This document shows, piece by piece, positions 5,940 to 36,029 of a DNA stretch of 64,000 nucleotides. The translations under genes were made by a program, and so were the position numbers. Source of the DNA: Macrostomum lignano (lineage: Eukaryota); the NCBI GenBank assembly GCA_002269645.1, contig NIVC01002074.1, positions 1 through 64,000 on the forward strand. The letters are read 5' to 3'. The first letter of the stretch is position 1. Every line of letters begins with the position of its first letter. The notes beneath the pieces were generated by a model that had not been told where the DNA came from, did not search any database, and saw only the letters and a program-made list of their open reading frames with translations.

Positions 5940-6127
5940 CTCGCAGGTTGCATTATTTTTGCAGGCAGAATCGGCGCACTCGTCCGAATTCACGGAGCAG
6001 TTCGGCCCGGTCCAGCCGTTGTTGCATTCGCACCTCCACTGATCGTTTATCGTTAAATCCTTAAGGCACAGGCCGTGGCCGCTGCAGTACAGCTGACTAT
6101 CGCATTCTTCAGGTCGTGGCGTGGCAC
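5940..6127 (-). CDS. Multi-EGF-repeat protein, coding exon 2 (not in the ORF track)
   Basis: ctctcag|GTGCC acceptor (phase 1). Encodes GATPRPEECDSQLYCSGHGLCLKDLTINDQWRCECNNGWTGPNCSVNSDECADSACKNNATCE. The phase-0 donor at 5939 joins exon 3 to complete the EGF CKNNATCE/DLANRRYKCIC. Confidence 0.9.
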
Positions 6128-6212
6128 CTGAGAGTGTGGGGTGGTGTTATTGGTTTTATTCCAAGAGCAATTTGTTGCCAATTTGTTAAAGTATTTCACT
6201 TATTTCAGCCTG

Positions 6213-8300: not shown

Positions 8301-8774
8301 TACGTCATGATAAGTTCTGTTAATTCCTAATCGAATGACGTGATTGTGAATCTTAGGATCCAGAGTTATCCCGATCTGAGACCATGATAGAACTAGAAGA
8401 TTATGAAATTATCTGTGTTGTGGGTCAGTGTGGCGTGGCTCAGGTTTTGATGCATCCAGATTGGATTTGTATTGAGATTCTACAATTCCCTGCCACTATA
8501 CTGAGTACTATGGCCATATCTAGCTTTCGAATATTGAATAATTAATTGAAGCAGAAAAGATTGCGCAGACACTTTGCTTGCTTGGCGACGTGATGGGATT
8601 TGCATTTTAGCCCATGCACATGCTCAAGGAATTCTTGGCGAGTCTGCAAGATGAGATCTGCGAGATTCAGATATGCAGTACAGTATCATTAGTTTTTTGG
8701 CAAAAAAATTCAGCTAATGCTGAAACCAATCTTGTTCTTCTGCAAGGCAAAAAGGTCTTTTTTCTTGGATTCTT

Positions 8775-10925: not shown

Positions 10926-11499
10926 AGGTTTTTAAGGGGCATTCGGGTTTTTCAATACGTTCGTTTAATCAGTCAGCTTATCAGTTTAATAACTGCTGTC
11001 ACGTGACTGCATCATGTGATGAGCGCAGACAGTCAGCGGTAGTGAAATGCATTATATGCGAGCGAAATAAGAAAACAGACATGAAGTATATTATAAAGTT
11101 ACATACTAGAAGTTATAAAGTAATACTAGACTGAATTTCGGACATGACAAGTTGAACATTTTGTGCTTCAATTTGGTTAGCGATTCACTTCAGTACAGAA
11201 TTTTTTGCCATAATGAAACAAAATCTTTCACACTAGACTGCTGATTGCTGCTGCTGTTGACAGAACAGAAATGTAACTATGAACTGATGCCTGCTTGAGT
11301 TTTTTATTTTAGCTTCTTCTTTCCGTCTGTCTGCTGCTGTGTGACTTTCTAGAATCTAGGAATATTTAATACAAGACCCAGTTGCTTTCCACACCAAGTC
11401 GTTATTAATAATATATCAATTACTGGTATTAACACAGCCCATAGATACTAAGATACTTCTAGATACTATTATAATGTTAAAGCAAACACTTTCACTCAC

Positions 11500-11590
11500 C
11501 AATCCTGGCTGATAGTACAGAAAATGGAAGCAACAAAAACGCAGCAAGCAGTGCCAGCGTTGTTGCAGTCGTACGTTGACTTTGGAGCAT
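11500..11590 (-). CDS. Multi-EGF-repeat protein, coding exon 1 (signal peptide)
   Basis: ATG at 11590 gives MLQSQRTTATTLALLAAFLLLPFSVLSARI, then G|GTGAGT. Hydrophobic signal-peptide pattern; the phase-1 donor matches the phase-1 acceptor at 6127. Confidence 0.8.
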
Positions 11591-12854
11591 CTTTTTTCAC
11601 TTTTCGGTAGTGAGTTTTAGAAGGTCTTGGTTAATGGTTACTTGTTAGAAGCACGATATAAGTCTTGATTTTTAGGAGTCCATTCTCCTATCTGTAAGTA
11701 GGCTGAGCTGAGATTGAGAGAGAGACCGTGTTTTTAATTCACAGAGCTGGCGCGCTGGGAACTTTTTATGCGGCCGGTTTGTTCAAAGCTTTTTTATTTT
11801 TCTCTGTCTCTATTTTGGGGGCAAGCTTTCGGTCGGGTCCTTTTTTCGCCTGCAGCGGTGGGGTCCCTGCTGTAAAATTAGAAGAGGGGCCAGGGGTTGG
11901 GGGTGGCCCCGACGGCGCGTTCTGGTTGGCTGGCTGGCTGTGGGTAAGGCGGGAGAACGGGGGTCGGTTCGGTTGTAGTTTGCAACGTTTTATCATCTGA
12001 ACTGAACCCAAACTCCCTTCGGCTTGCTATCTAAGGCAGTTAAAATTATCTGTACAGGGGACTGGGGGGATGTACATTGCTCACAAACCGTGAGAAAGAT
12101 TCGGACTTCCCAATCTGACTGTTCTTTTTTTATTTCGCTCATTCCACTGTCTCAGTCTGTTATCAACTCTATTCATAGTTTGTTTTTACTATTGACGTCA
12201 GAAAGATTGTTTAATTCCCTAATTAAGCCATGTTTCCCAATTCCTTCAGCCTCAATTACTTTACATTTGTGACTTTGTCGAGCAATCAATTAATATTAGT
12301 ATGTAACTAGTGCATTCATTATTGCTTGCTAAATTTAGATAAATTACGAAACAAGTTCAAAATGAGATGCAAAAAGTAAATATCTGGAAATATGATCAAA
12401 TATCCCATTGTAAAAAATCAAAAAAGCCCCCACCATCTGAATCAAGTTCGAACTCCACCTCAATTTTCATCAACCCCTTTTGGACCATGGGATGGGAAAA
12501 TGAAAACTAATGCCTTAACAACAACAAAAACGACCACAAACACCGTTTTCCGGTTTGTGTTGAAAGAAATCGACAGCAATAAACTTAATTTTTATGCCGT
12601 TACCTCATAATTTGCATATTCGATTTTCTTCTTTTTTTCTAATCGTTGCTACGCTCGTATGCTGCATTTTTATATGATTAATTGTCTTCATAAGCAATTA
12701 AATTTCAATGACTAAATGAGAAGTCTCAAATTATAAATGACACGAAGTCGAAACCTGACTGCCACAAAGGTTATCTTAACTGAGTTTGAAAAGCTCGAAT
12801 AAGCATTGATAGCATCCGGTTTCGTGTCTCGTGGTATTGATGAGATTTGTACAT

Positions 12855-13225
12855 GTACTTATGATCGGAGAGATGGGATCTGAGCTTATGATCGGAGAAA
12901 TGGGATCTGTACTTATGATCAGATTGAATCTGAACTTATGATCAGATGGAATCTGAACTTATGATCAGATGGAATCTGAACTTATGATCAGATGGAATCT
13001 GTGCTTATGATCAGATGGAATCTGTGCTTATGATCAGATGGAATCTGAACTTATGATCAGATGGAATCTGTGCTTATGATCAGATGGAATCTGTGCTTAT
13101 GATCAGATGGAATCTGTGCTTATGATCAGATGGAATCTGTGCTTATGATCAGATGGAATCTGTGCTTATGATCAGATGGAATCTGTGCTTATGATCAGAT
13201 GGAATCTGTGCTTATGATCAGATGG
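12855..13225. repeat. 23-bp minisatellite (cttatgatcagatggaatctgtg)
   Basis: Period 23 measured at 13021/13044. Confidence 0.95.
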
Positions 13226-14268
13226 GAACTATAACATACGATCAGAGAGATGGGATTAGTGCTGCAATTAAAAAGGGATCTGGTCAAGGATAGAAAGGGA
13301 TCTGGATAAGATTTAAACCAGGGGGATTGGCTCGATATTAGGATCATGAAAATGGGATTTGTACTGAAATTGAAGGGATTGGATCTATTAAAATGTATAG
13401 ATTCCATCCCAGTCCTCAGTTTCTGTTAAGTTAGACATTTAAAGAACGGGATTAAAATTGTGTTTTTTTCAAAATTAACAATCGGATGGGAAAATATGTG
13501 CATGGCAAAAATTGGTTGCTATATTACTGTCAGGAACGGAGACTTTCAAAGAATTCGCATACCTTCTTGTGCACCACAGTTCGCCGTGGGAGTCGGTTGC
13601 GGATGAATTTAAAATGGAACGCAAAATGTCGGTTTTAATTTTTTGACATGCCCCCCCCCCTATGATGCAAGCCGTCGTGGAACATATGATGCTTCCTTTC
13701 CTGCCTCGTCGGGTTCCCATCGCAGCCGGGATACGCAGGTATAGACACGGGGGGTATCGCATAGAACCAGACGGACAGTTGTTGTTAAGGAGCTACATGT
13801 ACTCGCGGGGGCGAGAGGGCCACGGATGAATACTTAGCGTAAAACATGCCAGACTAGCTGGAGAGGCCGACTATATAGAAGCTAAAAGAAGACAAGCAAA
13901 AGTTAAAACACTTTTCAAATCTGCTTTTTTGGCGTAAAAATGGTCGATTCACATGGCTTAGCAGAAACTTTAATTAAGCCTTAAGCTTGACCCATTCATT
14001 GGAGGCCTAGAAGCAGAACTGAAGGTAGCAACTCTTTGCCGAACCCCGCACTTTCAGACAAAATGAAATCAATCACATGCCTACCTACCTAACATGTAAG
14101 ATACAAACCATTTTTAGTATATACGTGTAGGACTCTGGGAGGAGGGGGAGACAACAAAGAAAGGAATACATTGTTTGAATAACTACATTTAGGTTTTGAC
14201 CTTGTACAGTCGATGTTGTTAATATCTCAAGGAAATAATGTTAAAAAAGCAAAAAAAAACATTTATCC

Positions 14269-15475
14269 AGCATTCCCTGTGAGCTTCGGCATCAAAACCT
14301 TACTTTAAATTTAAGCCATGGCTTAATCCCTACTCACCAATTGATTTACGAGTACCTTTGGTTTTGACTTACCAATAACTTCCAATTGACCTTTGGCATC
14401 TCAGCTACCCCGCCCCACCCATGAGCGACAGAATTTCAGCAATTCCTCCGTAAGCCTTAGCATCTAGCAATTCCCCCATAATCCTTAGCATCGCAGCAAT
14501 TCCCCCGTAAGCCTTAGCATCTCAGCAATTGCCCCGTAATCCTTAGCATCGCAGCAATTCCCCCGTAAGCCTTAGCATCTAGCAATTCCTCCGTAATCCT
14601 TAGCATCTCAGCAATTCCCCCGTAAGCCTTAGCATCGCAGCAATTCCTCCGTAATCCTTAGCATCTAGCAATTCCCCCATAAGCCTTAGCATCCAGCAAT
14701 TCCCCCGTAATCCTTAGCATCTAGCAATTCCCCCATAAGCCTTAGCATCTCAGCAATTCCCCCGTAAGCCTTAGCATCGCAGCAATTCCCCCGTATTAGC
14801 ATCGCAGCAATTCCTCCGTAATCCTTAGCATCGCAGCAATTCCTCCGTAATCCTTAGCATCTCAGCAATTCCCCCGTAAGCCTTAGCATCTAGCAATTCC
14901 TCCGTAATCCTTAGCATCTCAGCAATTCCCCCGTAAGCCTTAGCATCGCAGCAATTCCTCCGTAATCCTTAGCATCTAGCAATTCCCCCATAAGCCTTAG
15001 CATCCAGCAATTCCCCCGTAATCCTTAGCAACTAGCAATTCCCCCATAAGCCTTAGCATCTCAGCAATTCCCCCGTAAGCCTTAGCATCGCAGCAATTCC
15101 CCCGTATTAGCATCGCAGCAATTCCTCCGTAATCCTTAGCATCGCAGCAATTCCTCCGTAATCCTTAGCATCTCAGCAATTCCCCCGTAAGCCTTAGCAT
15201 CTCAACAATTCCCCCGTAAGCCTTAGCATCGCAGCAATTCCCCCGTATTAGCATCGCAGCAATTCCTCCGTAATCCTTAGCATCGCAGCAATTCCTCCGT
15301 AATCCTTAGCATCTCAGCAATTCCCCCGTAATCCTTAGCATCCAGCAATTCCCCCGTAATCCTTAGCATCGCAGCAATTCCCCCGTAATCCTTAGCATCT
15401 CAGCAATCCCCCCATAAGCCTTAGCATCGCAGCAATTCCCCCGTAAGACTTGACATCTCAGCAATCCCCCCAAGA
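14269..15475 (+). mobile_element. Dispersed non-autonomous element, copy A: ~140 bp unique leader plus 28-29-bp minisatellite (tctcagcaattcccccgtaagccttagca)
   Basis: Leader and repeat unit are both homologous to 31134-32340 (36/42 identity over 14364-14405 vs 31206-31247). The array itself is certain; the element interpretation is inference. Confidence 0.6.
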
Positions 15476-18554: not shown

Positions 18555-19924
18555 GTATTTACTAAAGAATCACTTCAAAGCTGGCTTATAGGTTTCTGTA
18601 AAAGTTATTGTTCCACCATCAAACGGTAATTTTGAAGCAAGTAAGGTTGAATTTATTTCGCGCTATTTTTACGGTTTGTTAGATACGAGCTAGATTGATT
18701 GGAGTCTAATAGTTGATAAATCTGCTCTTACCATTACAAGCTGTATTCAAACTAAAGAAATTATTTTTTTAATGGTTTTGAAAGCATGTAAATTTCATGT
18801 ACATCTATCTAAAGCTATTAGCTAATCATAAAATTATCAGCACAGGAATGTAATTGACAAAATTTAATGTTTATTAAATCGAATACTTTTGCAGTCAAAT
18901 ACCAGTCACACTCCAGGCTGGCAAATTGGTGAAAACGCCTTGCAAATTATGTATGTAATGTAAATGTAATTTACTTTAATTTAATGTAATTTAATGTAAT
19001 TTACATCACATGTATGTAAATGTACTCTTAGCAGCTGTCTCGCATGAAAATACTCGTAATAGAGCTTCGGATCTATTAATTTCGAATAAATATTTAGCAT
19101 AGGTCGTGGATCTAGCTCAAATTGTGTCTACTATTAATTTTCATAGATAAAAAAATGCTTCTATTCATTTTTTCTATCCATCCAATAAATCGCATTCGGT
19201 TCCGGGCGTCCAAAAAAATCAGAGTGTCAAAAATTTTGTGTTGTTTCATATATTTCTTAACCGCTATGTAGCAAGTTGTCAACAGCTAGCAAGAATTCTC
19301 CTGGATAAATACGCCGAATTTGGGGGAACATCAATCAAATCATGTCGGCATAAAACAAAAAACGACCCATTTACCGTAAGAGTTGAATAAGAATAGAAAA
19401 AACTTTTTGATAACATTAACTACTTGCAGTAGTGATGCTCGAGGAAGTACGTTTCGCTTTGGCTTTTGAACAAATAAAGAAACTTCCAGACTTATTAAAA
19501 GCGCAAGCCATCAAAAACTGGAAAAAAACTTGTCATAATTTCAAAGGAATTTGAGAGTAAGCTAGGTAAGACATTAGGATCCGATTGATGCCATGGATAC
19601 AAGTTAGCAGAATTTAGCATTTTGGGTCGGCTCATTGGCCAAATCAATATTGGACGTAATTGATTAGCACAATGCTTTCATAAGGCAGAAAGTCTAGCGA
19701 TTGAGGTCTATTCCAGTAAATTTAGTAGGGCAAAACTTAGAAATGTGGTGTCCAAGGAGAGAATTTCAAACTCAGTACAAGTAAATTGTAAATAGCACGA
19801 GCGTATAGAGAACACTAACTATGGTCTAATTATTGCTGTCACAAACTTAGGCATTAGGTTTTTCGGTGCTATGTACTATTAATCCCAATTCGCAAAAGTC
19901 TATTCATAAAGTGATCACAATCAG

Positions 19925-20101
19925 TTATGGCTTGTTCAGATCCTTGCAAAAACGGTTGCACTGGTGCGTACCAAAGAACTCTTTGATGCCGTCCGCACCA
20001 AGGTTCGTTGGATGGTACCGTGTGACGTCCTTGCAGTGGATTGCCGGGTCAGTCATCCAGATCTGCGGCTTCGAGTTTCCGGACGACTTTCGGATGCAGC
20101 C
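19925..20101 (-). CDS. vWA-alpha-kinase A (predicted active), exon 2 (not in the ORF track)
   Basis: ctacttcag|GGC acceptor. Encodes GCIRKSSGNSKPQIWMTDPAIHCKDVTRYHPTNLGADGIKEFFGTHQCNRFCKDLNKP*, containing the alpha-kinase TDP, NLGxxG and HxCxxxC motifs. Confidence 0.93.
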   Translation of the reverse strand, partial: GCIRKSSGNSKPQIWMTDPAIHCKDVTRYHPTNLGADGIKEFFGTHQCNRFCKDLNKP

Positions 20102-20190
20102 CTGAAGTAGGATATGTGATGGTTTTGCTATACAGCAAATGCTGAAAAGTGTTATGAACAGATCAGTGCATGGTATAAAAAGAGAACAAC

Positions 20191-21672
20191 CTGAAGGTCC
20201 ACAACGATCAGAAAGCCTTTAGTTGCGTTCCAAGTCCAGTGCGAGAATGCCGTGATGTAATCCAATACCTCGGGCTCAATTCCATACTTTTTCATCTCGT
20301 CAGCGCGCCTCTCCACAGTGTAGTTTAGGTTGTTTGTAAACTTCACAAACAGAGCGTCCTTCCCCATGAACTCTTCGCACGTCATTGTTCTGCTGGATGG
20401 TTGGCTGAGAACAAGCGTCTTTGTTGTGATGAACTTGATCTCGATACCGCTGGGCGTTGACTGACTGAACTCGGTGGCAAGAAAGGCTGCGATTGTTTGC
20501 ACCTCGCATGACGAATTGCATCTGTCCAGGATTTTATCGTGCTTATTCATACTTTTTGGCTCTTTTAGTACCATGAGCTGGTCGGAAGATGGACTACCGT
20601 CAGAATAGTGCTCCCCAAAATCTGCCAGCAGTGCATAAAACGCAAGCCTTTCTGCACCCTGGGCAAAAGGACTTTCGGATATCCTGACTTTTACGGAGCT
20701 GCCGTGCTCCTGTTTAATAGCTTTGTCGTCAATGATACAAGCAATTGAAGATGGAACAACAAACTCCAAAAAGTGGCCTACATTCACGGGCCTTTTTGAC
20801 CAGTCTGGAATCTCCGGTTTCAACGCAACTTCAGGCAGATTTTTGGGGCAAGCGACCAACTTGGAATTTTCTACGTTTCGTTCGACTGAAGTGGCGATCG
20901 ATTGAATAACCGATCCAGCTATCTGCTCAATTCCTGCCACTTCAAAGTGCTCAATTGTTCTACCGTAGGCGATGGCAAACTTGATCAGCATTTGCGCTGT
21001 TGACTTGTTGATCTCTCCAAAGTAATAGTCGATTTTCAGTTTTTTTATTTTATCGAACAGATCATGCTCCGTGCGACCCTTCGGATCCCCATTCGGGTGG
21101 CTGTCACCGAGCTCGCTTGTATGATATTCATTTCCGTGGCACGGAGCGTCGCAGATGTGAAAAATGATCCGCGTGCCTGCGGTTTCTGACCAGTTGAGTT
21201 TCGTGGTGGCCTCCAAACCCCCGAACACGTCTTCCGGTGCGTCACCTCCGCCTGTAGCAGCAATTTTTTCCAGAAAGCTGACGCACTGTTGGCTGTTTTC
21301 GCTGAAGTCGAATACTTCAAGCGGAACAGAATCGGTCAAGTCTCGGTAGGCTACAACGGCAAACCGGATCTTCTCAACAGTCGCCTGATTTTGCTGGCTG
21401 CGAACTAGAGTGTTCACTATCTTCTTTATGCTGTCCTTTGTTCCAGCGATGTGCCCAGCCATACTGCCAGTGGCGTCGAGTAGAAAGCACATGTCGACAC
21501 TCCTCGATTGCTTTATTTGGCTCATGGTCTTTTTAATGTTGTCCTGCGTGATGGCCAGCGCCAGCTTGAAGCGCCTGACTTGCTCATCTTCATCTGTGGG
21601 GTCAGGACCAAACTCCACGCCTCCGTTCTCGCAAATGTTGCGCAGCCTCTGGTTTAGCCGACTTAGGTCCAT
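20191..21672 (-). CDS. vWA-alpha-kinase A (Dictyostelium VwkA-like architecture; 552 aa with exon 2), exon 1
   Basis: vWA MIDAS DATGS, TGGGDAPE and ICDAP; alpha-kinase PFAQGAERLAF, VLKEPK, CEVQ, KFTNN, AFSHWT and VVDLQ|G. An 89-bp GT-AG intron splits DLQ/G. Confidence 0.93.
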
Positions 21673-23777
21673 ATTTTTCTTGTTTGGATTTATTTTTCAA
21701 AAGCTTGGGTATAAAGCAGTGCCGTTCGTCTGCTTTTTGAATTAAAATTAATGCGATATGAAACTACGAGTAAGAAGATATATTAAATTCAAAGTGCGCG
21801 GACAGGCCCATGATTTCCAGGAAACTCCTTCGACTGTACGCTTTGAATTTTTGCTCTAACTGTACACTCTGACTGTATACGTTTTGTTCGATAGGAAGAC
21901 TAGGACTTGACTTTATGAGACGAAGAGAGACAGAGAAGGACCGCACTTTCTTCCACATCGCTTGTACAATCAAAAGTAATGAGACTTAAGCCGTCCATTC
22001 GATCCAGATAGATACAGAGACGGCAATGTAGCGATACGGAACTTCTCAAAGAATTTCTAGGAAATTGGTAATGAGTCAATTGCTAGCATTTCTTGGAAAA
22101 AATGCTGTACATTGTGGCACTAGAGTGCGTTTCATCCTTTCAGAGGAAGTGTCCAACCGCACAGACAGGGCAAATCACATTCACAAACCACATTCGCTGG
22201 AGAAGCGAAATTTAAAGCCAGTATTTTTGCACATTGCACAGCATTTTAGCTAAAGCCAAATTTTAGCTACGCCAAGTGACTCAAGTCTATTTCCAACCCA
22301 AGAAACACGAACCGATACTAAATCCAGAACTTCGTCATTCAACGTAAGTAAAAGCGTATGCGACTAGCTTCTTAAAACTGTTATTGACGGTGTGGGAGCT
22401 TGTATAATTTTTTTGTTTTGGACCATCAAGACTCGTGATAAAAACCAGGTATGTGACTGTAAAATTGACGAGTTCAGTTTGTAAACTGTACAGCTACTCA
22501 TATAACGGTGCATATGTGTAGCTGCATCCTCTTAGTTTCTCAAGTAAATACTATAAATCCTGGAATCGCTGAGTTGTCAAGGCTCATGTAGGAATCTCTG
22601 AAATGTTGTGGCTCATGGGTTGCTCAGATGTTTTGAGCCAAAGATCATAGGGGATCTGATAATTTAGGCTAGATAGCTGGCTTTCATGGCGGATGCTATT
22701 TTGTTTTAAAGATCATTTTCCCTATGAAACTAACAATAGTGACTGTAAAAGGTCATAAACTGCATGTAGTTTATTCAACTCTTTTTTAGCCTCCCAAACA
22801 AGGGGCACAGATTCCTAGCTAGCACCTTGCTAATGTTCGCGACCATAGACAAAATTTCCCGAACCATGTACACACACACACTGGTGATTGCGTGCATGTT
22901 TTGGACAGAGAAGTCGAGGCCTAAGAAAAATAGCATTTCCGGCCGGATATTCATTCCCTGGTCCACTGCTAACTTTCTCTTTTAATTAACGCCAATACAT
23001 GTAGACACGGTGGTCATGTATAGCGTAACAAGATAACATAACAAGCAGCAAGGGACTCGGATCATCCGGACGCAGCGGGGTAGGCGTTCCATTCCGCTAA
23101 CCCCTAGCGACCCCTGGCCCCCGTCGCGCAAGGAGATCCGGTGGTGCCATGTCCGGAGCGCGGTCCATCTCCAGGCAGTGGATGGTCGCTCGCCCGGTAG
23201 CCCTTAGGTAAAAATTTTCGAACCTTAAAACGTTCGAAAGGTCCGGTTTTGGGCCGAGGTAGGTGAGCTTGTCCTGAACAAAGACGGGGCATTCACAGAT
23301 AAAGTGCTCCGCATTCTCAACACCGGAAAGGCAGAAGATTCACTTTAAGACATGAATGTAAGAGACACGCACAGCTATTTGGGTAAGGTTCGTAAAAATT
23401 CATTTCTTCGCTAAATGGAGAAACAAAGGTTTTTTAACTTAAATATTAGAGTATCGCTTTTTAAGTTATTTTCTCTCCATTAAATTTACTCCATTTTCGC
23501 ATGGTTTGTATGTATATGGTTACCTATCTTTCGTACGAGCGTATGTTCCTGCTTACAGGTAACGTCTCAGTGTCTCTCATTTAATTTTTTACAATGCCTC
23601 TCCAAAACAATTGAAGTTAAAAATGAAACTACGAGCGTACGATCGAAAAATACTATGTAAAGTAGTCAACAGTACAGAGCTTCATTAAAAATGCTTCTCA
23701 TGCATATAACACAAGCAATTACGTTATTAATTCCTTACTTCCCCATCCAATCCTCATTGCAGACTTCGTCGTACGCT

Positions 23778-25307
23778 ATGCTTTCCATTAATGAACGAAT
23801 TCGATGGATTTTTGAGCAGAGCGATCTGGAATACGGAAGGCCCACCGAGAATGAGGAGGAGCTTGTCCGCCGCTTCCAAATTGCAATTCAACTGCGAAAT
23901 CAGAAAGTTCAGCAGGTCTTAGAAGAAGAAGAGCAAAAAACGAAAGTATTAATCTGCTTCGTAATTAACTGCCAAGTTCTGACTGATTTCAGGCATCGCG
24001 ACTCAATTCGAAGAGCTATCCTAGCATTGTCGTCGAAAATAAAATACTCGAAGCGAAAAAGTTCTGCCATGTTAGTGGCGGCTTTATTTTACAGGAAACA
24101 AGGCTATCAAGTCATTACCTGTACATCTGACATTCAAGACATTCTGGACCTAGTAGACAGTCCAAGAAGTACTCGTATGCGTGGATATTCATCGGCTTCT
24201 TTAGTGGAAGAGCTCGAGGGGATGAACTTTGCCGCATTGGTTTGTCCAGAGTCGCACGAAGCGATTTCTAGTTTCAAAGCTGTCGTTCACTTTACGGACA
24301 AGCCACAGAATTTCAATCCAGTATCAAAGGCAATTAAGGACCGTGCGTCAATAGTTGGTGACAGCTTCCGTCAGAAGAATCTGAGTTACTACTGGGTCCC
24401 TATCAGTTGGGATGAAAAAGTTTTAACTGTACTCAAGAAACACTTCGTCGGCATGGAAGCCATTGAATTGAGGAGCAGTGACGCCCTAGTAGAAAAAATT
24501 CTTCAAGATGCGTACAGGCGGTTCCGCAATGCCCAAGTTGAAATCTGCGGTATTCCAAATTTCACCGTAGCGACTGCGACCCCCGATTTGGGCGCTCCGG
24601 ATTGGAAGGATGCGGCTGCAGAAGACTTTCAGTACCATGCTATTGGCGTGCCGGCTTCAATACAGAGCATCGTTGACGGTTCCGAACTCAGCCGAACCGT
24701 CTTCAGCGTGCAAGTGAGGAAATCAGCCCGTCCCTTCGCGTTCCAAGGACTGGCTGCAGAGTACTTTGCGCTACTCAAAGAGGGGGAAGCACCATGGCAC
24801 AAAGCAACTGTGCGAGAGTTCCTTGTATCCGACTTAAAAAATACATTCAAGCAGCCTTTCGTTCTTCTCAATACTTGCGAGATTCTTCAGGTAGCGACGT
24901 TTTTATTTCAGGAGTTCAACAGGTTGAATAAAATCGTACGAGTCGTCAAGCCCTTCACGACTGCCGTCATCATTCCAAGGACGCGACGTGCAGGACTCGA
25001 TCCAGCACTGCTATGCCCATTTCGATTTGAGAAGAAGCTCGCGGGAGCCAATCAATTTGAAATAATTGACGACGACTGGAATCCAGGTGAAGTGACGTCA
25101 GCTAACCCAGTTGAATCTGATTGCAGAGGTGCCGCTGGTACTGGAAACTCGTCCTCTAAGCAAGCGTCCTCAGGCAACCCTGAAAAGCACTGTTTCTCCG
25201 CTTCTCGACGATTCAAGCTAGTAGATCCAAACGTGCCCGTTCTTGACTGTTTTGCGCACTGGACACATGCTATCACTGGCGGCTATTTGCTAGTGGAAGG
25301 TCTTGAG
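23778..25307 (+). CDS. vWA-alpha-kinase B (predicted pseudokinase with degenerate vWA; 576 aa with exon 2), exon 1
   Basis: Colinear with kinase A: INERIRWIFEQSDLEYGRPTENEEELVRRF vs LNQRLRNICENGGVEFGPDPTDEDEQVRRF; PDLGAPDW vs PEIPDW; RPFAFQG; CEIL; CFAHWTHAITGGYLLVEGLE. Start placed at the Met that aligns with A; donor GAG|GTCTGT. Confidence 0.88.
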
Positions 25308-25425
25308 GTCTGTTAACACGCAAACACGCGTCAATTTTTAAGATTCAATAGCATATGTACGAGCTACGAGCGTACTTTTTCTTTATATTCCGAAGCATAG
25401 CCTGAAAAACACCTGACTTTTGTAG

Positions 25426-25626
25426 ATATTCACGCGCTGCTCCAAGACGTTGTCGGACGAAGCAAGCGAGGCCCTGATAAAAAGCGCGAAGATTCACTGC
25501 TCAGACGTCACTCGCTTTTTGCCTTGGAACTTAGGCAAATCCGGCATCCGGAGATACCTTCAGAAGCACGAGGGCAACGACTTGTGCAAGAAGATGGGAC
25601 TGCGAAGGGTGTTTATGAACATGTAA
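25426..25626 (+). CDS. vWA-alpha-kinase B, exon 2 (not in the ORF track)
   Basis: ttttgtag|ATA acceptor. Encodes IFTRCSKTLSDEASEALIKSAKIHCSDVTRFLPWNLGKSGIRRYLQKHEGNDLCKKMGLRRVFMNM*, which aligns to exon 2 of kinase A (IHCxDVTR, NLGxxGI). Confidence 0.9.
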   Translation: MFTRCSKTLSDEASEALIKSAKIHCSDVTRFLPWNLGKSGIRRYLQKHEGNDLCKKMGLRRVFMNM

Positions 25627-26343
25627 ACCGTTTATGAATGGCTTTTGAGCGATTTCCTGTTTTTTGTATTGCAGATTGATTTAGACACCACTAATAATAG
25701 CAGTAGCAATTTTCGTAGAACCATAAAATATCCCTTATCCAAAGTTGATGGCTTTATTAACGAAACAAATCGGTTGCCGGTTATTACTTTACTTTATTTA
25801 GTAGCTTAGGTAGTGTTTGCTTGCACGGGAGTCTCTGAAAAAGCGGAGTTTTGGTTTTGGTTTCATTTTTGCATGGTTCGGTTCTAAACCACTCCAAAGT
25901 TAAAAAAAATCCTAGCGTATGCAAACTAGATGTTGCGATTTTCCATTATAATTAGTCAAATCTAGCGCTAGAGAGAACCGGATGCCGCGTAAATAATTTT
26001 GTTTGATTGATGCACTCGCACTTCTTGTTAAACTTTTATATACTTTCTTCTATCTTTTATTCTAGCAAACAAGGTTTTGGAAACATTTTTTGAAACCTTT
26101 GAACCTTGATTTAGAAAAAACCTGCTCGCAAATCAAATCTGTTTGTAAATTCCAGTTTTTTAAGTACTTGGAAGAATATGTTACTCTACGAACAGACATC
26201 AAATTTTATACCCCTTACTAGGAGGAGGATCGGGTGTTGTGTCTTGCGTTGAGTATACTCATATAAATTGATTTCACTAAAATATTTTTATCCAATATTT
26301 GCTTCAATCTTCAATAAAATGGAAACTAATTTATTCACAATGA

Positions 26344-26544: not shown

Positions 26545-27650
26545 TTGTTTTTGTGGTTTTTGCTGTAGTTGTTGTTCTTTTTGCTGTTCTTTTTGTTGTT
26601 GTTGGCACCAATCAGTTTGCATCAAAAGCAGCAACACCATGTCGCCGAGCGAGAAGAAATCAGACAGGCGCTCAACTCCGTTGGTCCCACTGAAATTGTC
26701 CCGGAAGCTCGCCACAGAGTCAACAGACGTCGCCGATGGCGGTGCCAGTGTGGTTCCGATAGTAGGTCGGTAGACTCCGGGCAGTGGCCTGCCCTGGTCT
26801 GCGAGACCAGGCTTTGCTGTTTGACAGGACCATTGTGGTGTGTCACTGGAGCGCCAAAGACGTCCAGGAGGTGGCCCTAGCTCTAGAAAGTAGGTTGAAA
26901 CTTGTGATAGTGCCGCGGATTCTCTCCTTGGCAGCTGCGAGAGTGATGGAAACCTAGTCTTGGGGGAGACTGGCAGAGTGCTTAGCTTCGGTGTCGATCA
27001 ACTTCTGAGCACCCAGAGTGTCCATGCAGGAACCTAATGCAAGGTCATCTTAGTTGAACGCAAAGCTTGAATCAGGAGCAGCTTGACTTCCTCCAGGAAG
27101 GTGGTTAGTCGTCGGGTGGTCGGAGGGAATGGCTGTCGGTAAAGGATGGTGGCGTTGCTGGGCGCGGTGGTAATGAGATACTGAAGAGCCATGAGCCAGA
27201 TGGTGATGAGCTTCGATTTAAAGTAACTGCAACAGCGGCCAGCCGCGGCGTGCCCCCCAGGATGATGGAGCAGCCGGAACGGTCAGTGTGGATCCAGGCC
27301 GAGCCTTACCATTCTCCGGGCACCGAGCCGTCAGCCCAAAAACCATGCACTGGAGACTAGAAGACAGCATTCTGTTTTGGACGGATTGATGTCGATGAGC
27401 AGGTGGGAGCTGCCCATTCATTAACCTTGTCGAGAGCTGCTTGGAAACGACCTTAGAGGTCACTCAGGTTGCAGATTGACAGGACTTCATCATCTATAGG
27501 TCGTCCGCTGTAGTCCACTGAGCGGTCTGGAGCCGGACCAGGCATTACATATACAACAGTAAAAAACCGGCGAGCTTCCGCCTTCGCAGCCACGTCCACT
27601 TCTTCATTACCACTGAGGCCGCAGTGTGCTGCAGGACCCAGCAAATGGTC
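26545..27650 (-). mobile_element. Degenerate 5'-truncated non-LTR retrotransposon (RNase H-bearing LINE), possibly two fragments
   Basis: RNase H motifs PAAHCGLSGNEEVDVAAK (about 27580-27640) and TLH*VPA...IDTEAK (about 26990-27050); C-terminal SQTRAGHCP...C*LCG zinc-finger relic; (CAA/A)-rich tail at 26545-26605; stops and frameshifts throughout. Confidence 0.7.
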
Positions 27651-31133: not shown

Positions 31134-32340
31134 AGCATCTCCTTTGAGATTTGGCATCAAGGCCTCTCTTGAGCCATAGCTTAACCCTAACTCCCCCTTT
31201 GATGCTTGACCTACAAAAAACTCCCAATTGACACTTGGCATCTCAGCAATTCCCCACGAAAGCCTTGAAATCTCAGCAATTCCCTACGAAAGCCTTGAAA
31301 TCTCAGCAATTCCCCACGAAAGCCTTGAAATCTCAGCAATTCCCCACGAAAGCCTTGAAATCTCAGCAATTCCCCACGAAAGCCTTGGCATCTCAGCAAT
31401 TCCCCACGAAAGCCTTGAAATCTCAGCAATTCCCTACGAAAGCCTTGAAATCTCAGCAATTCCCCACGAAAGCCTTGAAATCTCAGCAATTCCCCACGAA
31501 AGCCTTGAAATCTCAGCAATTCCCCACGAAAGCCTTGAAATCTCAGCAATTCCCCACGAAAGCCTTGAAATCTCAGCAATTCCCACGAAAGCCTTGAAAT
31601 CTCAGCAATTCCCCACGAAAGCCTTGAAATCTCAGCAATTCCCACGAAAGCCTTGAAATCTCAGCAATTCCCCACGAAAGCCTTGAAATCTCAGCAATTC
31701 CCCACGAAAGCCTTGAAATCTCAGCAATTCCCCACGAAAGCCTTGAAATCTCAGCAATTCCCACGAAAGCCTTGAAATCTCAGCAATTCCCCACGAAAGC
31801 CTTGAAATCTCAGCAATTCCCCACGAAAGCCTTGAAATCTCAGCAATTCCCCACGAAAGCCTTGAAATCTCAGCAATTCCCCACGAAAGCCTTGAAATCT
31901 CAGCAATTCCCCACGGGAGTCTTGACATCTCAGCAATTCCCCACGGGAGTCTTGATATCTCAGCAATTCCCCACGGGAGTCTTGACATCTCAGCAATTCC
32001 CCACGGGAGTCTTGACATCTCAGCAATTCCCCACGGGAGTCTTGACATCTCAGCAATTCCCCACGGGAGTATTGACATCTCAGCAATTCCCCACGGGAGT
32101 CTTGACATCTCAGCAATTCCCCACGGGAGTCTTGACATCTCAGCAATTCCCCACGGGAGTCTTGACATCTCAGCAATTCCCCACGGGAGTATTGACATCT
32201 CAGCAATTCCCCACGGGAGTCTTGACATCTCAGCGATTCCCCACGGGAGTCTTGACATCTTAGCAATTCCCCACGAGAGTCTTGATATCTCAGCGATTTC
32301 CCACGGGAGTCTTGACATCTCAGCAATTCCCCACTTGAGC
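31134..32340 (+). mobile_element. Dispersed non-autonomous element, copy B: ~110 bp leader plus 30-bp minisatellite (tctcagcaattccccacgaaagccttgaaa, switching to ...cacgggagtcttgaca)
   Basis: Homologous to 14269-15475; period 30 measured at 31241/31271. Confidence 0.6.
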
Positions 32341-32859
32341 CTTGAAATCTTAACAGTTCTCCCTACTAAAGAAATAGGACACCACGGGTGTCCAAGTTTC
32401 CTGGCCGTAGCAACTCCATTAAAATATTGTGTACTTGTACTACTAGATTATTCAATTTACTAGTATTCTACTATTTATATTGGAAACCGTTGCTAGATGT
32501 GGGGAGAGACGGAGTGCTCACACGGTGTTCCGTATTAATCAAATTAATAAGCCACAGAATATAGGACAATTATCCCTGTGCTATTGGGAAGCAAGGTAGC
32601 CAAGGGGATTATAATACACTGTCTGCCTTGTGTGTATTATGCCTTGTGTGCTTCTCTTAATCCTCTCTTCTTGTTGAGTAGTCGAGAGCATAATTTGGTG
32701 TGTAGCTGGGGTAAGGTTGCCTGCTCAGGGCTACACGCTATACATGCTCTCTCTAGTTCAGCTGGGTTTAAGCCAGAAAGTAATAGGAAAGCGAAATGAA
32801 TTTGACAAAAGTAATTAGATTGGGCTAAAACTGTAATAGTATTCATTCCAGCGGGCCAG

Positions 32860-34454: not shown

Positions 34455-35240
34455 TTATTGTCTATGGCCCAATTGTCGCTGAAGTTGTTCTCCCGTATTT
34501 GGAAGTTATTGTCTATGGCCCAATTGTCGCTGAAGTTGTTCTCCCGTATTCGGAACTTATTGTCTATGGCCCAATTGTCGCTAAAGTTGTTCTCCCGTAT
34601 TCGGAACTTATTGTCTATGACCCAATTGTCGCTGAAGTTGTTCTCCCGTATTCGGAACTTATTGTCTATGGCCCAATTGTCGCTGAAGTTGTTCTCCCGT
34701 ATTCGGAACTTATTGTCTATGGCCCAATTGTCGCTGAAGTTGTTCTCCCGTATTCGGAACTTATTGTCTATGGCCCAATTGTCGCTGAAGTTGTTCTCCC
34801 GTATTCGGAACTTATTGTCTATGGCCCAATTGTCGCTAAAGTTGTTCTCCCGTATTCGGAACTTATTGTCTATGACCCAATTGTCGCTGAAGTTGTTCTC
34901 CCGTATTCGGAACTTATTGTCTATGGCCCAATTGTCGCTGAAGTTGTTCTCCCGTATTCGGAACTTATTGTCTATGGCCCAATTGTCGCTGAAGTTGTTC
35001 TTCCGTATTTGGAACTTATTGTCTATGGCCCAATTGTCGCTGAAGTTGTTCTCCCGTATTCGGAACTTATTGTCTATGACCCAATTGTCGCTGAAGTTGT
35101 TCTCCCGTATTCGGAACTTATTGTCTATGGCCCAATTGTCGCTGAAGTTGTTCTCCCGTATTTGGAACTTATTGTCTATGGCCCAATTGTCGCTGAAGTT
35201 GTTCTTCCGTATTCGGAACTTATTGTCTATGGCCCAATAT
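34455..35240. repeat. 51-bp minisatellite (ttattgtctatggcccaattgtcgctgaagttgttctcccgtattcggaac)
   Basis: About 15 copies; gives the 17-aa periodic pseudo-ORFs. Confidence 0.97.
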
Positions 35241-35412
35241 ACAAGTGCGCCAATACTGACTCACACACACGCTCACACAGGGTGTACAGCAGTCCTGACT
35301 GTCCAATCGTCAGGCATGTACACTCCCTGTGCTTTGGGGGCTGGCCCTCATGGCCCTCGGGAATCGAACTAGGGGTCGTGGCGCGAGAGTCACTGAACTG
35401 GGCTAAAGGGCA
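35237..35412 (-). mobile_element. tRNA-derived SINE (tRNA-Glu-like head plus body)
   Basis: Minus strand reads tagcccagttcagtgactctcgcgccacgacccctagttcgattcccg, a tRNA-like head with box B; the body is shared with segments at 30906 and 37085. Confidence 0.55.
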
Positions 35413-36029
35413 GATTGATGCGCATGAGTTGCGCCTGTCCTATATATGCACGCTGGTACATAAGGCCAGTTGGTGAATTAGGACTCAATTACACAGACCA
35501 GGTCGATACGCCGCTCCACCTGCACTCGCGGTGCGACTCAGTTTTTTTCTCACTTTGATTAGACACTGCCAGCTTGGGATCGGATGATGAGGAACGGTGA
35601 GAAAGGGAAAAAAGGAAGAGAACAGGCGGGTCGGCGAGTAAATTAGGGGATGGAGAAGAGGATAATGGGAAGCTAGGGGAGAGGATGCGATAGGCGAGTT
35701 GGGGTTTGAGCTCAATTTTTTAGTAGCTATTCGGCTCAGACCTGCAGCGATCGAATGCAGCCCGACTCCTGTGCTCACCGCTGCTCAGGAAGTAACAGGA
35801 GCTCTGGTGATGCCAGAGTAACGGGGAGTAGGGAGATTTATATATATATATATAGATGGGAGGTACAAAATTTGGGACTCAGATTATTTTAATGCCCAAT
35901 GTCGATATGGAAATTTGATGCTCGTAAACAGCCTATTATTGAGATTTTGACTTATTATTCGGTGAGAGAAGGGCGAGAAGGGCGGAGACTGAGGTTTAGA
36001 AAAGGGCGTAGAGTAGATGGGAATAAAGC

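What the first reader, a model, noticed from the sequence alone, without database searches (positions are those of the whole stretch)
23778..25626. Kinase B has lost each functional residue by point substitution while keeping frame, splice sites and fold motifs
Seen by aligning to A: MIDAS DATGS becomes INCQ; the catalytic Lys (VLKEP) becomes Arg (TVREF, CGA at 24813); catalytic DLQG becomes GLEI (GGT at 25299); the metal-binding TDP becomes KSA (about 25480); the zinc site HQCNRFC becomes HEGNDLC. Structural motifs (PDW, PFA, AHWT, IHCxDVTR, NLGxxGI) are retained, and a roughly 40-aa Ser/Gly-rich insertion sits in the kinase C-lobe. Established: these positions correspond to the Lys, Glu, Asp, Gln and Asp catalytic set and the HHCC zinc site of TRPM7, eEF2K and MHCK-A kinase domains. 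Inference: deep divergence with no stop or frameshift in 576 codons implies selection on a non-catalytic role, i.e. a pseudo-alpha-kinase with a pseudo-MIDAS vWA domain.
Basis: partly seen in the sequence, partly recalled or inferred. Interest (0 to 1): 0.72.

Follow-up and report, generated by a model that had tools for sequence, protein, structure and literature searches.

The report
Dead alpha-kinase paralogue in a flatworm
This flatworm (Macrostomum lignano) gene is an intact copy of the neighbouring vWA/alpha-kinase gene that has lost its ATP-, metal- and catalysis residues yet is still under purifying selection, so it is a lineage-specific "pseudokinase", a known kind of protein and not a new one.

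Summary
Gene B (+ strand, exons 23778-25307 and 25426-25626, 576 aa) is collinear over its whole length with the active vwkA-type vWA/alpha-kinase A (- strand, 19925-21672). The hhalign probability is 99.9% at 21% identity.

At positions invariant in 79 vwkA-like kinases, B carries:
- K346R
- D508G
- Q510E
- G511I
- TDP529-531KSA
- P-loop G323Q and R326A
- MIDAS D64N, T66Q and S68L

The fold, the DLQ|G intron position and three of four zinc ligands are kept. An AlphaFold model matches eEF2K, MHCK-A and TRPM7, and also vWA domains.

All relatives found are from Macrostomum lignano. A second locus has the same head-to-head A'/B' pair. dN/dS between B and B' is 0.49 (p=9e-6), against 0.25 for A and A'.

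Refinements:
- Selection is seen on the N-terminal helices and the kinase-like lobes. It is not seen on the vWA remnant (omega 0.80, not significant).
- The zinc Cys-to-Gly change is private to this copy.
- The catalytic-Asp column reads G, N and D in three copies, so that loss is recent.
- A third copy is truncated and frameshifted.
- The hinge insertion is an expandable coding minisatellite.

B is most likely a non-catalytic binding partner or scaffold. A pseudo-alpha-kinase (ALPK3) is already known, so this is a new member of a known kind.

The parts
23778..25307 (+). Gene B exon 1 (codons 1-510): N-terminal helices, vWA remnant, kinase-like N-lobe, disordered hinge insertion, and the start of the C-lobe up to G508-L-E510
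   Evidence: The ORF and splice donor were read directly. The database model P0003 has the same junction, EGLE|IFTR. hhalign against the vwkA family is collinear.
25308..25425 (+). Gene B intron (118 nt, GT..AG, phase 0), at the same position as the A intron, after DLQ / GLE
   Evidence: The same DLQ|GT intron is present in the M. lignano paralogue P0005.
25426..25626 (+). Gene B exon 2 (codons 511-576 plus TAA): I511, KSA 529-531, IHCxDVTR, NLGxxG, HEGNDLC
   Evidence: The Pfam Alpha_kinase hit covers residues 487-564 (7.4e-8).
23778..23939 (+). N-terminal helical segment (aa 1-54). It is one of the two segments most similar to A (28% identity; C-lobe 31%) and has the lowest dN/dS (0.13).
   Evidence: The AlphaFold model has helices 2-14 and 26-52 at pLDDT 85-96.
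23940..24545 (+). vWA-like alpha/beta domain remnant (aa 55-256) with no Pfam VWA hit. The former MIDAS DxTxS is now N64-C-Q66-V-L68 (23967-23981).
   Evidence: The model has alternating strands and helices. Foldseek matches ANTXR2/CMG2, Rpn10, TFIIH p44 and integrin beta-I vWA domains. omega is 0.80, not significant.
24597..25037 (+). Kinase-like N-lobe and central sheet (aa 274-420). PDW and PFA are kept. P-loop G323Q and R326A. The invariant Lys is Arg346 (CGA 24813-24815). E418 is kept.
   Evidence: omega is 0.34, p=0.008.
25038..25208 (+). Ser/Gly-rich disordered insertion in the inter-lobe hinge (aa 421-477). It is homologous to a single unit of the 87-nt coding minisatellite that is expanded to 10.7 copies in paralogue B' (L001 11382-12314).
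   Evidence: pLDDT is below 50. Residues lie opposite gaps in A. The repeat was found with TRF on L001 and is visible in the translations.
25257..25307 (+). Start of the C-lobe: zinc ligand H494 (25257-25259) is kept. The catalytic loop VVDLQG is now VEGLE(I), with G508 = GGT at 25299-25301 and E510 at 25305-25307.
   Evidence: This column is D in 100% of 79 relatives.
25480..25488 (+). K529-S530-A531 in place of the metal-binding T-D-P
   Evidence: The same KSA is present in all three M. lignano loci.
25567..25587 (+). Zinc module H558-E-G560-N-D-L-C564. The first Cys is replaced by Gly (GGC 25573-25575) in this copy only.
   Evidence: P0001, P0003, L001 and L002 all read H-x-C-N-x-x-C.
19925..21672 (-). 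Gene A, the intact vwkA-type vWA/alpha-kinase (552 aa): exon 1 21672-20191, intron 20190-20102, exon 2 20101-19925. It lies head-to-head with B. It is the presumed parent or partner.
   Evidence: Pfam VWA_4 4.9e-11 and full-length Alpha_kinase 4.6e-40. All MIDAS, catalytic and zinc residues are present. It has homologues in nematodes, rotifers, cnidarians, Dictyostelium and moss.
21673..23777 (.). The 2.1-kb divergent intergenic region between the two start codons. It contains a LINE-like remnant (about 23098-23340, - strand) and an AG acceptor 15 nt upstream of B's ATG.
   Evidence: There is no detectable similarity to the equivalent 1.4-kb spacer of L001.

Best explanation
Gene B is an intact, expressed-type gene model. 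It encodes a catalytically dead paralogue of the adjacent vwkA-type vWA/alpha-kinase A, that is, a pseudo-alpha-kinase.

Shown here:
- B shares A's full domain order (N-terminal helices, vWA fold, alpha-kinase fold, zinc module) and A's intron position.
- It has replaced the ATP-phosphate Lys with Arg, which is the classical kinase-dead change.
- It has also replaced the P-loop Gly and Arg, the catalytic Asp, the metal-binding Gln and Asp, and the MIDAS triad.
- It still evolves under purifying selection in the N-terminal helices and in both kinase-like lobes.

Inferred:
- B cannot bind Mg-ATP productively or transfer phosphate.
- It works through binding. The surfaces that stay conserved are the N-terminal helical motif shared with animal vwkA-like kinases, the zinc-stabilised C-lobe, and the NLGxxG loop that alpha-kinases are thought to use for substrate recognition.
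- My preferred mechanism is that B acts as a non-catalytic partner, regulator or decoy of the active neighbour A or of A's substrates. This is the usual way kinase/pseudokinase pairs work.
- The vWA remnant is becoming dispensable.
- The disordered hinge is a variable, expandable low-complexity module.
For: Homology and architecture:
- BLASTP is collinear at 20% and 34% identity.
- hhalign gives 99.9% probability and E 1e-35 over 498 columns.
- The Pfam Alpha_kinase hit scores 33 bits against a cut-off of 21.3.
- The AlphaFold model has pLDDT 75 and pTM 0.73. Foldseek matches it to eEF2K (7e-8), MHCK-A (TM 0.61-0.63) and TRPM7, and to vWA domains (ANTXR2 TM 0.68, Rpn10 0.63).

Dead active site:
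- K346R, D508G, Q510E, G511I, T529K, D530S, P531A, G323Q and R326A all sit at columns that are 95-100% conserved in 79 relatives.
- Those columns map onto the MHCK-A and TRPM7 catalytic residues.
- In TRPM7, K1646R causes complete loss of kinase activity (PMC4274504).

Selection:
- There is no stop in 576 codons at 21% identity to A, while 0 of 200 neutral simulations stayed open.
- omega between B and B' is 0.49 (p=8.6e-6). It is 0.13 for the N-terminal helices, 0.34 for the N-lobe and 0.40 for the C-lobe.
- omega between the window copy and L002 is 0.42 (p=2.6e-5).
- The nucleotide similarity found between the two loci lies in the two genes, and stops within 2 nt of both stop codons.
- A truly dead copy (L002) shows what decay looks like: truncation, an indel and a frameshift.

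Link to A:
- The head-to-head A/B pair is kept at two otherwise unalignable loci.
- The other M. lignano vwkA-like gene whose locus could be searched (P0005, L003) has no B-type neighbour. For P0006 only the gene calls were seen; none is a second alpha-kinase.
- TRPM6 and TRPM7 alpha-kinase domains are known to dimerise and heteromerise (PMC2827801).
- ALPK3 is a precedent for a scaffold-type pseudo-alpha-kinase (PMC9698156).
Against: - No expression, binding or activity data were available. The partner-of-A idea rests only on adjacency, shared motifs and analogy.
- The A-B spacer is not conserved between loci, so there is no evidence for a shared promoter.
- omega for B is twice that of A (0.49 against 0.25), and the vWA part is statistically neutral.
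- This particular copy has lost a zinc-ligand Cys. Mutating that Cys abolishes activity in TRPM7, and it may destabilise the fold here.
- Database models of other copies carry in-frame deletions.
- One copy is decayed.
- The family is known from a single species, so long-term conservation cannot be shown.
- The AlphaFold fold was predicted with an alignment dominated by true vwkA kinases, so it partly inherits their fold.
Confidence: 0.6

Rival explanations
1. B is a redundant duplicate on its way to becoming a pseudogene in a recently polyploid, repeat-rich genome. It has no function of its own. The frame is still open only because decay is slow, or because gene conversion from other copies keeps repairing it.
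For: - omega for B is twice that of A.
- The vWA remnant has omega 0.80, and the hinge 0.73, both not significant.
- A zinc Cys is lost in this copy only.
- The catalytic-Asp column drifts between G, N and D.
- L002 is truncated and frameshifted, and gene A is deleted there.
- Models P0001 and P0003 lack pieces.
- dS varies from 0.11 to 0.45 along the gene, and L002 is a mosaic of window-like and L001-like residues. Both suggest gene conversion.
- The family is seen in one species only.
Against: - B is about 79% diverged from every vwkA-like protein (at least 2.1 substitutions per site) and still has no stop or frameshift in 576 codons. Neutral simulation gives at least 10 stops in every run.
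- omega is significantly below 1 overall and in three separate regions, including the region with the highest dS (C-lobe, dS 0.45, omega 0.40, p=0.005).
- The splice sites are intact.
- Conversion among copies cannot explain why all of them kept the frame over the long A/B divergence.
Confidence: 0.15
2. B is a selected non-catalytic protein, but its role is independent of A. Examples would be a stand-alone scaffold, or a low-complexity, condensate-forming protein that uses the kinase-like fold only as a stable binding platform.
For: - The evidence for selection is the same as in the main model.
- The Ser/Gly/Tyr/Arg-rich hinge expands to 10.7 in-frame copies of a 29-aa unit in B'.
- The A-B intergenic spacer is not conserved.
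- ALPK3 works as a structural scaffold with partners that are not kinases.
Against: - The A/B pair stays adjacent and head-to-head at both intact loci.
- B's best-conserved N-terminal motif is shared with A-type kinases.
- Nothing here tests either version directly.
Confidence: 0.2
3. B is still an enzyme. It could be an atypical kinase that uses displaced residues, such as Arg346 or Lys342 for phosphate contacts, Glu507 or Glu510 as acid or base, and the conserved Asp522-Glu523 in the preceding loop for metal binding. Alternatively it has a different nucleotide-dependent activity.
For: - HMMER's pairwise alignment to TRPM7 places B's conserved 'LSDE' under 'LTDP'. The D-E pair is conserved in B, B' and B''.
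- E418 and N435 are kept.
- From general knowledge, several proteins first called pseudokinases later proved active.
Against: - The same pairwise HMMER alignment also mis-pairs the TDP of the undoubtedly canonical A.
- The profile-profile alignment and the model's strand 525-535 put KSA, not SDE, at the TDP position.
- Six independent ATP, Mg or catalysis positions are lost together.
- K-to-R alone kills TRPM7.
- The catalytic-Asp column varies freely between copies (G, N, D). This is not expected of a working site.
Confidence: 0.05

Closest known systems
vwkA-type vWA/alpha-kinases (Dictyostelium VwkA and its animal, plant and protist relatives; here gene A, P0005 and P0006)
   Same: - Same order of parts: N-terminal helices, vWA fold, alpha-kinase fold with a C-terminal zinc module.
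- Collinear profile alignment at 99.9% probability.
- Same intron after DLQ.
- B lies next to a canonical family member.
   Different: - The MIDAS triad, P-loop Gly and Arg, catalytic Lys, Asp, Gln and metal Asp are all replaced.
- There is no Pfam VWA hit, and only the last third of the Alpha_kinase model matches.
- A hinge insertion of about 35 aa is present.
- The branch is very long (at least 2.1 substitutions per site, against 0.8 for A).
- VwkA itself autophosphorylates and is catalytically active (PMC2827801).
[quoted passage not shown]
   Same: It has an alpha-kinase fold with conserved cleft residues replaced, it is retained by selection, and it acts as a non-catalytic scaffold.
   Different: [quoted passage not shown]
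- ALPK3 differs at four conserved residues (G, K, Q, N) and retains the aspartate predicted to be critical for catalysis. B has lost Lys, both Asp positions and Gln.
- ALPK3 is conserved across vertebrates. B is known only from M. lignano.
TRPM7 K1646R (K1648R in human) kinase-dead mutant
   Same: It has the same Lys-to-Arg replacement at the Mg-ATP-binding lysine, which abolishes TRPM7 kinase activity (PMC4274504).
   Different: It is an engineered single change in an otherwise intact kinase. B carries it naturally, together with many other losses.
MIDAS-less vWA domains used for protein binding (proteasome Rpn10, TFIIH p44/Ssl1)
   Same: Both are among the best structural matches of the B model's N-terminal domain (Rpn10 TM 0.63; TFIIH p44 entries). 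The absence of a functional MIDAS in these proteins is from general knowledge, not tested here.
   Different: There is no sequence relationship beyond the fold. In B this domain evolves almost neutrally (omega 0.80), so a retained binding role is doubtful.
Other degenerate alpha-kinase-like proteins in public data (P0160, P0158, P0222, P0175 from the alga Ostreobium, P0156)
   Same: They have lost the catalytic Asp, the TDP Asp, or both, while keeping HWT and the HxCxxxC zinc motif.
   Different: They are unrelated lineages of the DCQG subgroup. All are uncharacterised, and none is close to B (E-values 7e-6 to 9e-4, against 1e-250 within the B family).

Membership tests
Alpha-kinase superfamily (homology and fold; Pfam PF02816) | Significant sequence or profile match to the alpha-kinase domain | tested here: met
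   Pfam scores 33.1 bits against a cut-off of 21.3, covering only profile positions 120-185. hhalign to a 69-sequence vwkA profile gives 99.9% probability across the whole domain.
Alpha-kinase superfamily (homology and fold; Pfam PF02816) | Two-lobed alpha-kinase fold | tested here: met
   The AlphaFold model matches eEF2K (E 7e-8), MHCK-A (TM 0.61-0.63) and TRPM7 ChaK. Caveat: the input alignment was dominated by true alpha-kinases.
Alpha-kinase superfamily (homology and fold; Pfam PF02816) | C-lobe zinc module (His, His, Cys, Cys) | tested here: inconclusive
   H494, H558 and C564 are kept, and C560 is Gly in the window copy. All four ligands are present in P0001, P0003, L001 and L002.
Catalytically competent alpha-kinase (enzyme class) | Invariant ATP-binding Lys (TRPM7 K1646, MHCK-A K645) | tested here: not met
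   Arg346 (CGA 24813) is found in all B copies. This column is Lys in 79 of 79 relatives.
Catalytically competent alpha-kinase (enzyme class) | Catalytic loop D-x-Q-G (TRPM7 D1765 and Q1767) | tested here: not met
   B reads G508-L-E510-I511. The D and G columns are 100% conserved and the Q column 95% conserved in relatives.
Catalytically competent alpha-kinase (enzyme class) | Metal-binding Asp of T-D-P (TRPM7 D1775, MHCK-A D766) | tested here: not met
   B reads K529-S530-A531. An alternative pairing of D522 under this Asp was judged unreliable, because the same method mis-pairs gene A.
Catalytically competent alpha-kinase (enzyme class) | Measured phosphotransferase activity or nucleotide binding | not testable with these tools
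   This needs recombinant protein assays.
vwkA-like architecture (vWA plus alpha-kinase) | N-terminal vWA domain | tested here: inconclusive
   There is no Pfam VWA hit for B. The region does align collinearly to the family's vWA, and the model's domain matches ANTXR2, Rpn10 and integrin vWA folds.
vwkA-like architecture (vWA plus alpha-kinase) | MIDAS motif DxTxS | tested here: not met
   D64N, T66Q and S68L. These columns are 99-100% conserved in relatives.
Functional pseudokinase (selected, non-catalytic) | Purifying selection on the coding sequence | tested here: met
   omega is 0.49 (p=8.6e-6) against L001 and 0.42 (p=2.6e-5) against L002. It is significant for the N-terminal helices, the N-lobe and the C-lobe, and not for the vWA remnant or the hinge. 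Retention of the open frame is incompatible with neutrality.
Functional pseudokinase (selected, non-catalytic) | Transcribed and translated | not testable with these tools
   Only database gene models are available. P0001 and P0003 start exactly after the AG acceptor upstream of the ATG, and P0003 uses the same exon junction. No read data were available.
Unprocessed pseudogene | Disabling stops, frameshifts or lost splice sites | tested here: not met
   There are none in the window copy or in L001. They are present only in L002.

The most novel reading that the evidence does not exclude
A and B form a dedicated kinase/pseudokinase pair that is encoded head-to-head. In this reading B binds A, for example through the shared N-terminal helices or a TRPM6/7-like lobe contact, and it switches or targets A's activity. 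The expandable Ser/Gly/Tyr-rich coding minisatellite in B's hinge would serve as a tunable phospho-acceptor or condensate-forming array. This would be the first regulatory pseudokinase partner described for the alpha-kinase family.
Probability: 0.12. Interest if true: 0.55.

Novelty: new member of a known kind. Interest (0 to 1): 0.35.

Why it matters
Pseudokinases are well studied among conventional protein kinases. In the atypical alpha-kinase family only ALPK3 has been argued to be one.

This flatworm gene is a cleaner natural example. It sits next to its active parent-type gene, and it has lost essentially the whole ATP, Mg and catalysis apparatus together with the MIDAS site. Several copies are at different stages: two intact copies, one with an expanded hinge repeat, and one decayed.

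That makes it a convenient system for asking which surfaces of the alpha-kinase fold are kept for non-catalytic work. Macrostomum lignano is also a laboratory animal in which gene knock-down is, from general knowledge, routine.

It does not reveal a new kind of molecule or mechanism.

Tried and rejected
1. Orthologues outside M. lignano. An exhaustive HMMER scan of 1.84 billion representatives found only three B-type proteins, all from M. lignano. The next hits are generic alpha-kinases at E 5e-18 or weaker. Age and multi-species dN/dS could therefore not be obtained.

2. Phylogenetic placement. In a neighbour-joining tree with 100 bootstraps, B groups with the M. lignano A-types in only 38 of 100 replicates. 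This is long-branch noise, so the claim 'duplicate of A' rests on adjacency and the shared intron, not on the tree.

3. An alternative alignment that would restore the metal Asp (B 'LSDE' under TRPM7 'LTDP'). I rejected it because the same pairwise method mis-pairs the genuine TDP of gene A. The profile-profile alignment and the model's strand register both support KSA at that position.

4. A shared bidirectional promoter. No similarity exists between the A-B spacers of the two loci, even at word size 7. The window spacer carries a LINE-like remnant.

5. A Pfam VWA hit for B. None was found, even at E=1.

6. DNA for the closest copies. P0001 is not on record, so only protein identities by region could be compared.

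7. B-type neighbours of the other M. lignano vwkA-like genes. None was found by tblastn at L003. L004's DNA could not be read in the script, so for it only the gene calls, which list no second alpha-kinase, were seen.

8. Literature. No paper in the library mentions alpha-kinases in Macrostomum.

9. Selective loss of functional residues. Catalytic and MIDAS positions are kept at 1 of 10, against 31 of 71 other conserved positions. This is not significant (p=0.08).

10. An A-B complex prediction. I did not attempt it, because the structure tool returns no inter-chain or PAE information.
Full report
**What is there**

The window comes from the flatworm Macrostomum lignano. The closest proteins to gene B are M. 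lignano entries at 79-98% identity.

Gene B lies on the + strand. Exon 1 is 23778-25307, a GT..AG intron is 25308-25425, and exon 2 is 25426-25626. The product is 576 codons.

Gene A lies head-to-head on the - strand, 2.1 kb away. Exon 1 is 21672-20191, the intron is 20190-20102, and exon 2 is 20101-19925. It encodes 552 aa.

A is a canonical vwkA-type kinase. Pfam gives VWA_4 at 4.9e-11 and a full-length Alpha_kinase match at 4.6e-40. Homologues at 30-46% identity occur in nematodes, rotifers, cnidarians, Dictyostelium and mosses. In B, Pfam recognises only the last third of the kinase model (7.4e-8) and no vWA.

**Checking the observation**

The only correction is register: DATGS aligns with NCQVL (D64N, T66Q, S68L).

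Three independent alignments give the same pairing:
- BLASTP, collinear at 20% identity over 436 aa and 34% over 87 aa.
- MAFFT with 79 vwkA-like proteins.
- hhalign of a B-family profile against a 69-sequence vwkA profile, with probability 99.9%, E 1e-35 and 498 columns.

The family profile aligns its VlKef / VvDLqGv / LTDPaih motifs to the MHCK-A motifs VLKLY / VVDIQGV / YTDPQIH. A's HWT and DLQ fall on TRPM7 H1751, D1765 and Q1767.

The following changes sit at columns that are 95-100% conserved in the 79 relatives:

| Site | Change in B |
|---|---|
| P-loop | G323Q, R326A |
| ATP-binding Lys | K346R |
| Catalytic loop | D508G, Q510E, G511I |
| Metal-binding TDP | T529K, D530S, P531A |
| MIDAS | D64N, T66Q, S68L |

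B keeps PDW, PF(A), E418, N435, the HWT motif, IHCxDVTRF, NLGxxG, H558 and C564.

Overall B keeps 35 of 85 family-conserved columns. The catalytic losses are therefore part of a general, very deep divergence and are not a significantly selective erasure (1 of 10 against 31 of 71 kept, p=0.08).

In TRPM7, the Lys-to-Arg change alone gives complete loss of kinase activity (PMC4274504). Mutation of the zinc cysteines abrogates activity (PMC2827801).

**Structure**

An AlphaFold2 model built on the 83-sequence alignment has pLDDT 75 and pTM 0.73. It shows:
- two N-terminal helices (2-14 and 26-52);
- an alternating alpha/beta domain (56-256);
- a kinase-like domain (280-420 and 480-570);
- a disordered segment (421-477).

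Foldseek against the PDB returns eEF2K (7e-8), MHCK-A (TM 0.61-0.63) and TRPM7 ChaK for one half. For the other half it returns ANTXR2/CMG2 (TM 0.68), Rpn10 (0.63), TFIIH p44 and integrin beta-I vWA domains.

The caveat is that the alignment is dominated by genuine vwkA kinases.

**Is it under selection?**

The spliced frame has no stop, while the other five frames have 19-34. P(open) from base composition is 3e-14. None of 200 neutral simulations of A's CDS taken to 21% identity stayed open; the minimum was 10 stops.

A second locus, L001 (NIVC01001533.1), has the same head-to-head pair A'/B'. Nei-Gojobori estimates for the two pairs are as follows:

| Comparison | dS | omega | p |
|---|---|---|---|
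| A vs A', whole gene | 0.128 | 0.25 | 3.3e-9 |
| B vs B', whole gene | 0.213 | 0.49 | 8.6e-6 |
| B: N-terminal helices | 0.296 | 0.13 | 0.0008 |
| B: vWA remnant | 0.201 | 0.80 | 0.43 |
| B: kinase N-lobe | 0.108 | 0.34 | 0.008 |
| B: hinge | 0.342 | 0.73 | not significant |
| B: C-lobe | 0.446 | 0.40 | 0.005 |

Protein identities tell the same story. Against the closest copy (P0001) the vWA remnant is 82% identical, while every other region except the N-terminal helices (91%) is 97-99%. Against B' it is 71%, against 92% for the N-lobe. P0001 lacks 10 residues at the former MIDAS strand, and P0003 lacks the whole vWA part.

Selection therefore acts on the N-terminal helices and the kinase-like fold. 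The vWA remnant looks relaxed. Its open frame is required in any case to translate what follows.

**Copies at different stages**

- The zinc Cys-to-Gly change (TGC to GGC) is private to the window copy.
- The catalytic-Asp codon is GGT (G) here, AAC (N) in L001 and GAC (D) in L002. With D in all outgroups, the Asp was retained after Lys, Gln and the TDP Asp had gone, and was then lost twice. That is the behaviour of a site no longer under constraint.
- L002 (NIVC01000192.1) is syntenic with L001, with flanks 96-97% identical. It lacks gene A and the first ~260 codons of B. The rest carries an 8-aa indel and a frameshift. It is a genuinely decayed copy and a useful contrast.
- The hinge insertion of the window copy corresponds to one unit of an 87-nt (29-aa, Ser/Gly/Ala/Tyr/Arg/Asp-rich) coding minisatellite. 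That repeat is expanded in frame to 10.7 copies, 98% identical to each other, in L001. The expansion is also present in an independent gene model, P0227.

**Origin**

B sits on a very long branch, at least 2.1 substitutions per site from every vwkA-like protein. A is 0.8 from its nearest relatives. A neighbour-joining tree cannot place B; it groups with the M. lignano A-types in 38 of 100 bootstraps.

Three observations point to an inverted tandem duplicate of an A-type gene followed by rapid divergence. This is an inference.
- B is adjacent to A.
- The intron after DLQ is shared, and the paralogue P0005 has it too.
- The other M. lignano vwkA-like gene whose locus was searched (P0005, L003) has no B-type neighbour; for P0006 only the gene calls were seen, and none is a second alpha-kinase.

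An exhaustive search of 1.84 billion representative proteins found no B-type protein outside M. lignano.

**How it most likely works**

Shown: the ATP, Mg and catalysis apparatus and the MIDAS site are gone, while the fold and several surfaces are kept under purifying selection.

Inferred: B acts by binding, not by catalysis. The conserved parts are:
- an N-terminal helical motif (LxxRLRxIxE..G.DYG....DE.ELV.RF) shared with A, P0005, P0006 and the nematode and other animal vwkA-likes inspected;
- the zinc-stabilised C-lobe;
- the glycine-rich NLGxxG loop, which the alpha-kinase literature links to peptide-substrate recognition.

TRPM6 and TRPM7 alpha-kinase domains dimerise and heteromerise. 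The A/B pair is also kept together at both intact loci. I therefore favour B as a non-catalytic partner, regulator or decoy of A or of A's substrates.

A stand-alone scaffold role, as in ALPK3, is the main alternative. Ongoing non-functionalisation is the sceptical one. Residual atypical activity is unlikely.

**Comparison and novelty**

B is a homologue of the alpha-kinase and vwkA families. It fails every tested catalytic and MIDAS criterion, so it is a member of the superfamily and not of the enzyme class.

ALPK3 has already been described as a pseudo-alpha-kinase (PMC9698156). MIDAS-less vWA folds are known. Other uncharacterised degenerate alpha-kinase-like proteins are scattered in public data. 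No paper in the library mentions this gene or alpha-kinases in Macrostomum.

This is a new, lineage-specific member of a known kind. It would interest people who study pseudoenzymes and it is experimentally tractable, but it is not surprising in principle.

**Unexplained**

Similarity between the window and L001 stops within 2 nt of both stop codons, and 8 and 28 nt upstream of the two ATGs. The spacer and flanks are unalignable even though dS is only 0.13-0.21. dS also varies four-fold along B, and L002 is a mosaic. Gene conversion confined to the coding regions, or very fast turnover of non-coding DNA in this minisatellite-dense genome, would explain this. I did not resolve it.

Noticed in passing
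window 19922-21680 and 23750-25628 versus L001 6872-8627 and 9965-12771: Nucleotide similarity between the two paralogous loci is confined almost exactly to the two coding regions, plus A's intron. The 2.1-kb A-B spacer and both flanks show no match even at word size 7, although dS is only 0.13-0.21. dS varies from 0.11 to 0.45 along B. This suggests CDS-limited gene conversion or very rapid non-coding turnover.
   Followed up: partly
L002 (NIVC01000192.1) 5752-10560: This locus is a sister of L001, with flanks 96-97% identical. Gene A and the first ~260 codons of the B-type gene are missing. The remainder has an 8-aa indel and a frameshift. It has one hinge repeat unit and still carries Asp (GAC) at the catalytic position. 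Its N-lobe residues resemble the window copy and its C-lobe resembles L001, so it is a mosaic.
   Followed up: partly
L001 11382-12314: An in-frame 87-nt coding minisatellite, 10.7 copies at 98% identity, encodes SDRRGAAGFAHSAAGNPSYDRGSSDSYYE repeats inside the kinase-like domain of paralogue B'. The annotated protein P0002 has fewer units than the genome, while model P0227 has them all.
   Followed up: partly
window, throughout (e.g. 960-1929, 2627-5068, 6207-7209, 8782-10886, 14437-15471, 31240-32350, 44434-45473, 55499-56358, 59128-60620): The window is packed with minisatellite arrays of 19-51-nt units (55 TRF rows). Several long 'ORFs' (8717-10927, 31632-32318, 34458-35476, 55437-56448, 58938-60437) are simply translations of these arrays. 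The A/B pair is a small island of unique sequence.
   Followed up: partly
window 5035-5733 (- strand): A 232-aa ORF has four EGF-like domain matches (PF00008, 1.1e-24). It is probably an exon of an EGF-repeat protein and directly abuts a 35-nt satellite array.
   Followed up: no
window 23098-23340 (-) and about 27200-27650 (-): These are remnants that look like the 3' end of a non-LTR retrotransposon ORF2 ('ENAEHFICECPVFVQDKLTYLG...') and an RNase H-like segment ('HCGLSGNEEVDVAAKAEARR'). The second is frameshifted. One sits in the A-B spacer and one downstream of B. I recognised them by eye only and did not test them against profiles.
   Followed up: no
window 51555-54284 (+): A 909-aa ORF lies in a 68% GC block. 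It is extremely rich in Pro, Ala, Ser, Asp and Gln (poly-P and poly-Q runs) and has no Pfam match. It is either a low-complexity protein-coding exon or a composition artefact.
   Followed up: partly
L003 (NIVC01001563.1) 10001-13888: The M. lignano vwkA-like gene P0005 has the same intron after VVDLQ. It is followed by a second, partial same-strand copy (12604-13888), so tandem duplication of this family recurs in the genome.
   Followed up: no
proteins P0156, P0158, P0160, P0175, P0222: These are unrelated alpha-kinase-like proteins from an alga (Ostreobium), a metagenome-assembled 'archaeon' bin and unnamed assemblies. They have also lost the catalytic and/or metal Asp while keeping the zinc motif. 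Pseudo-alpha-kinases may have arisen repeatedly.
   Followed up: partly
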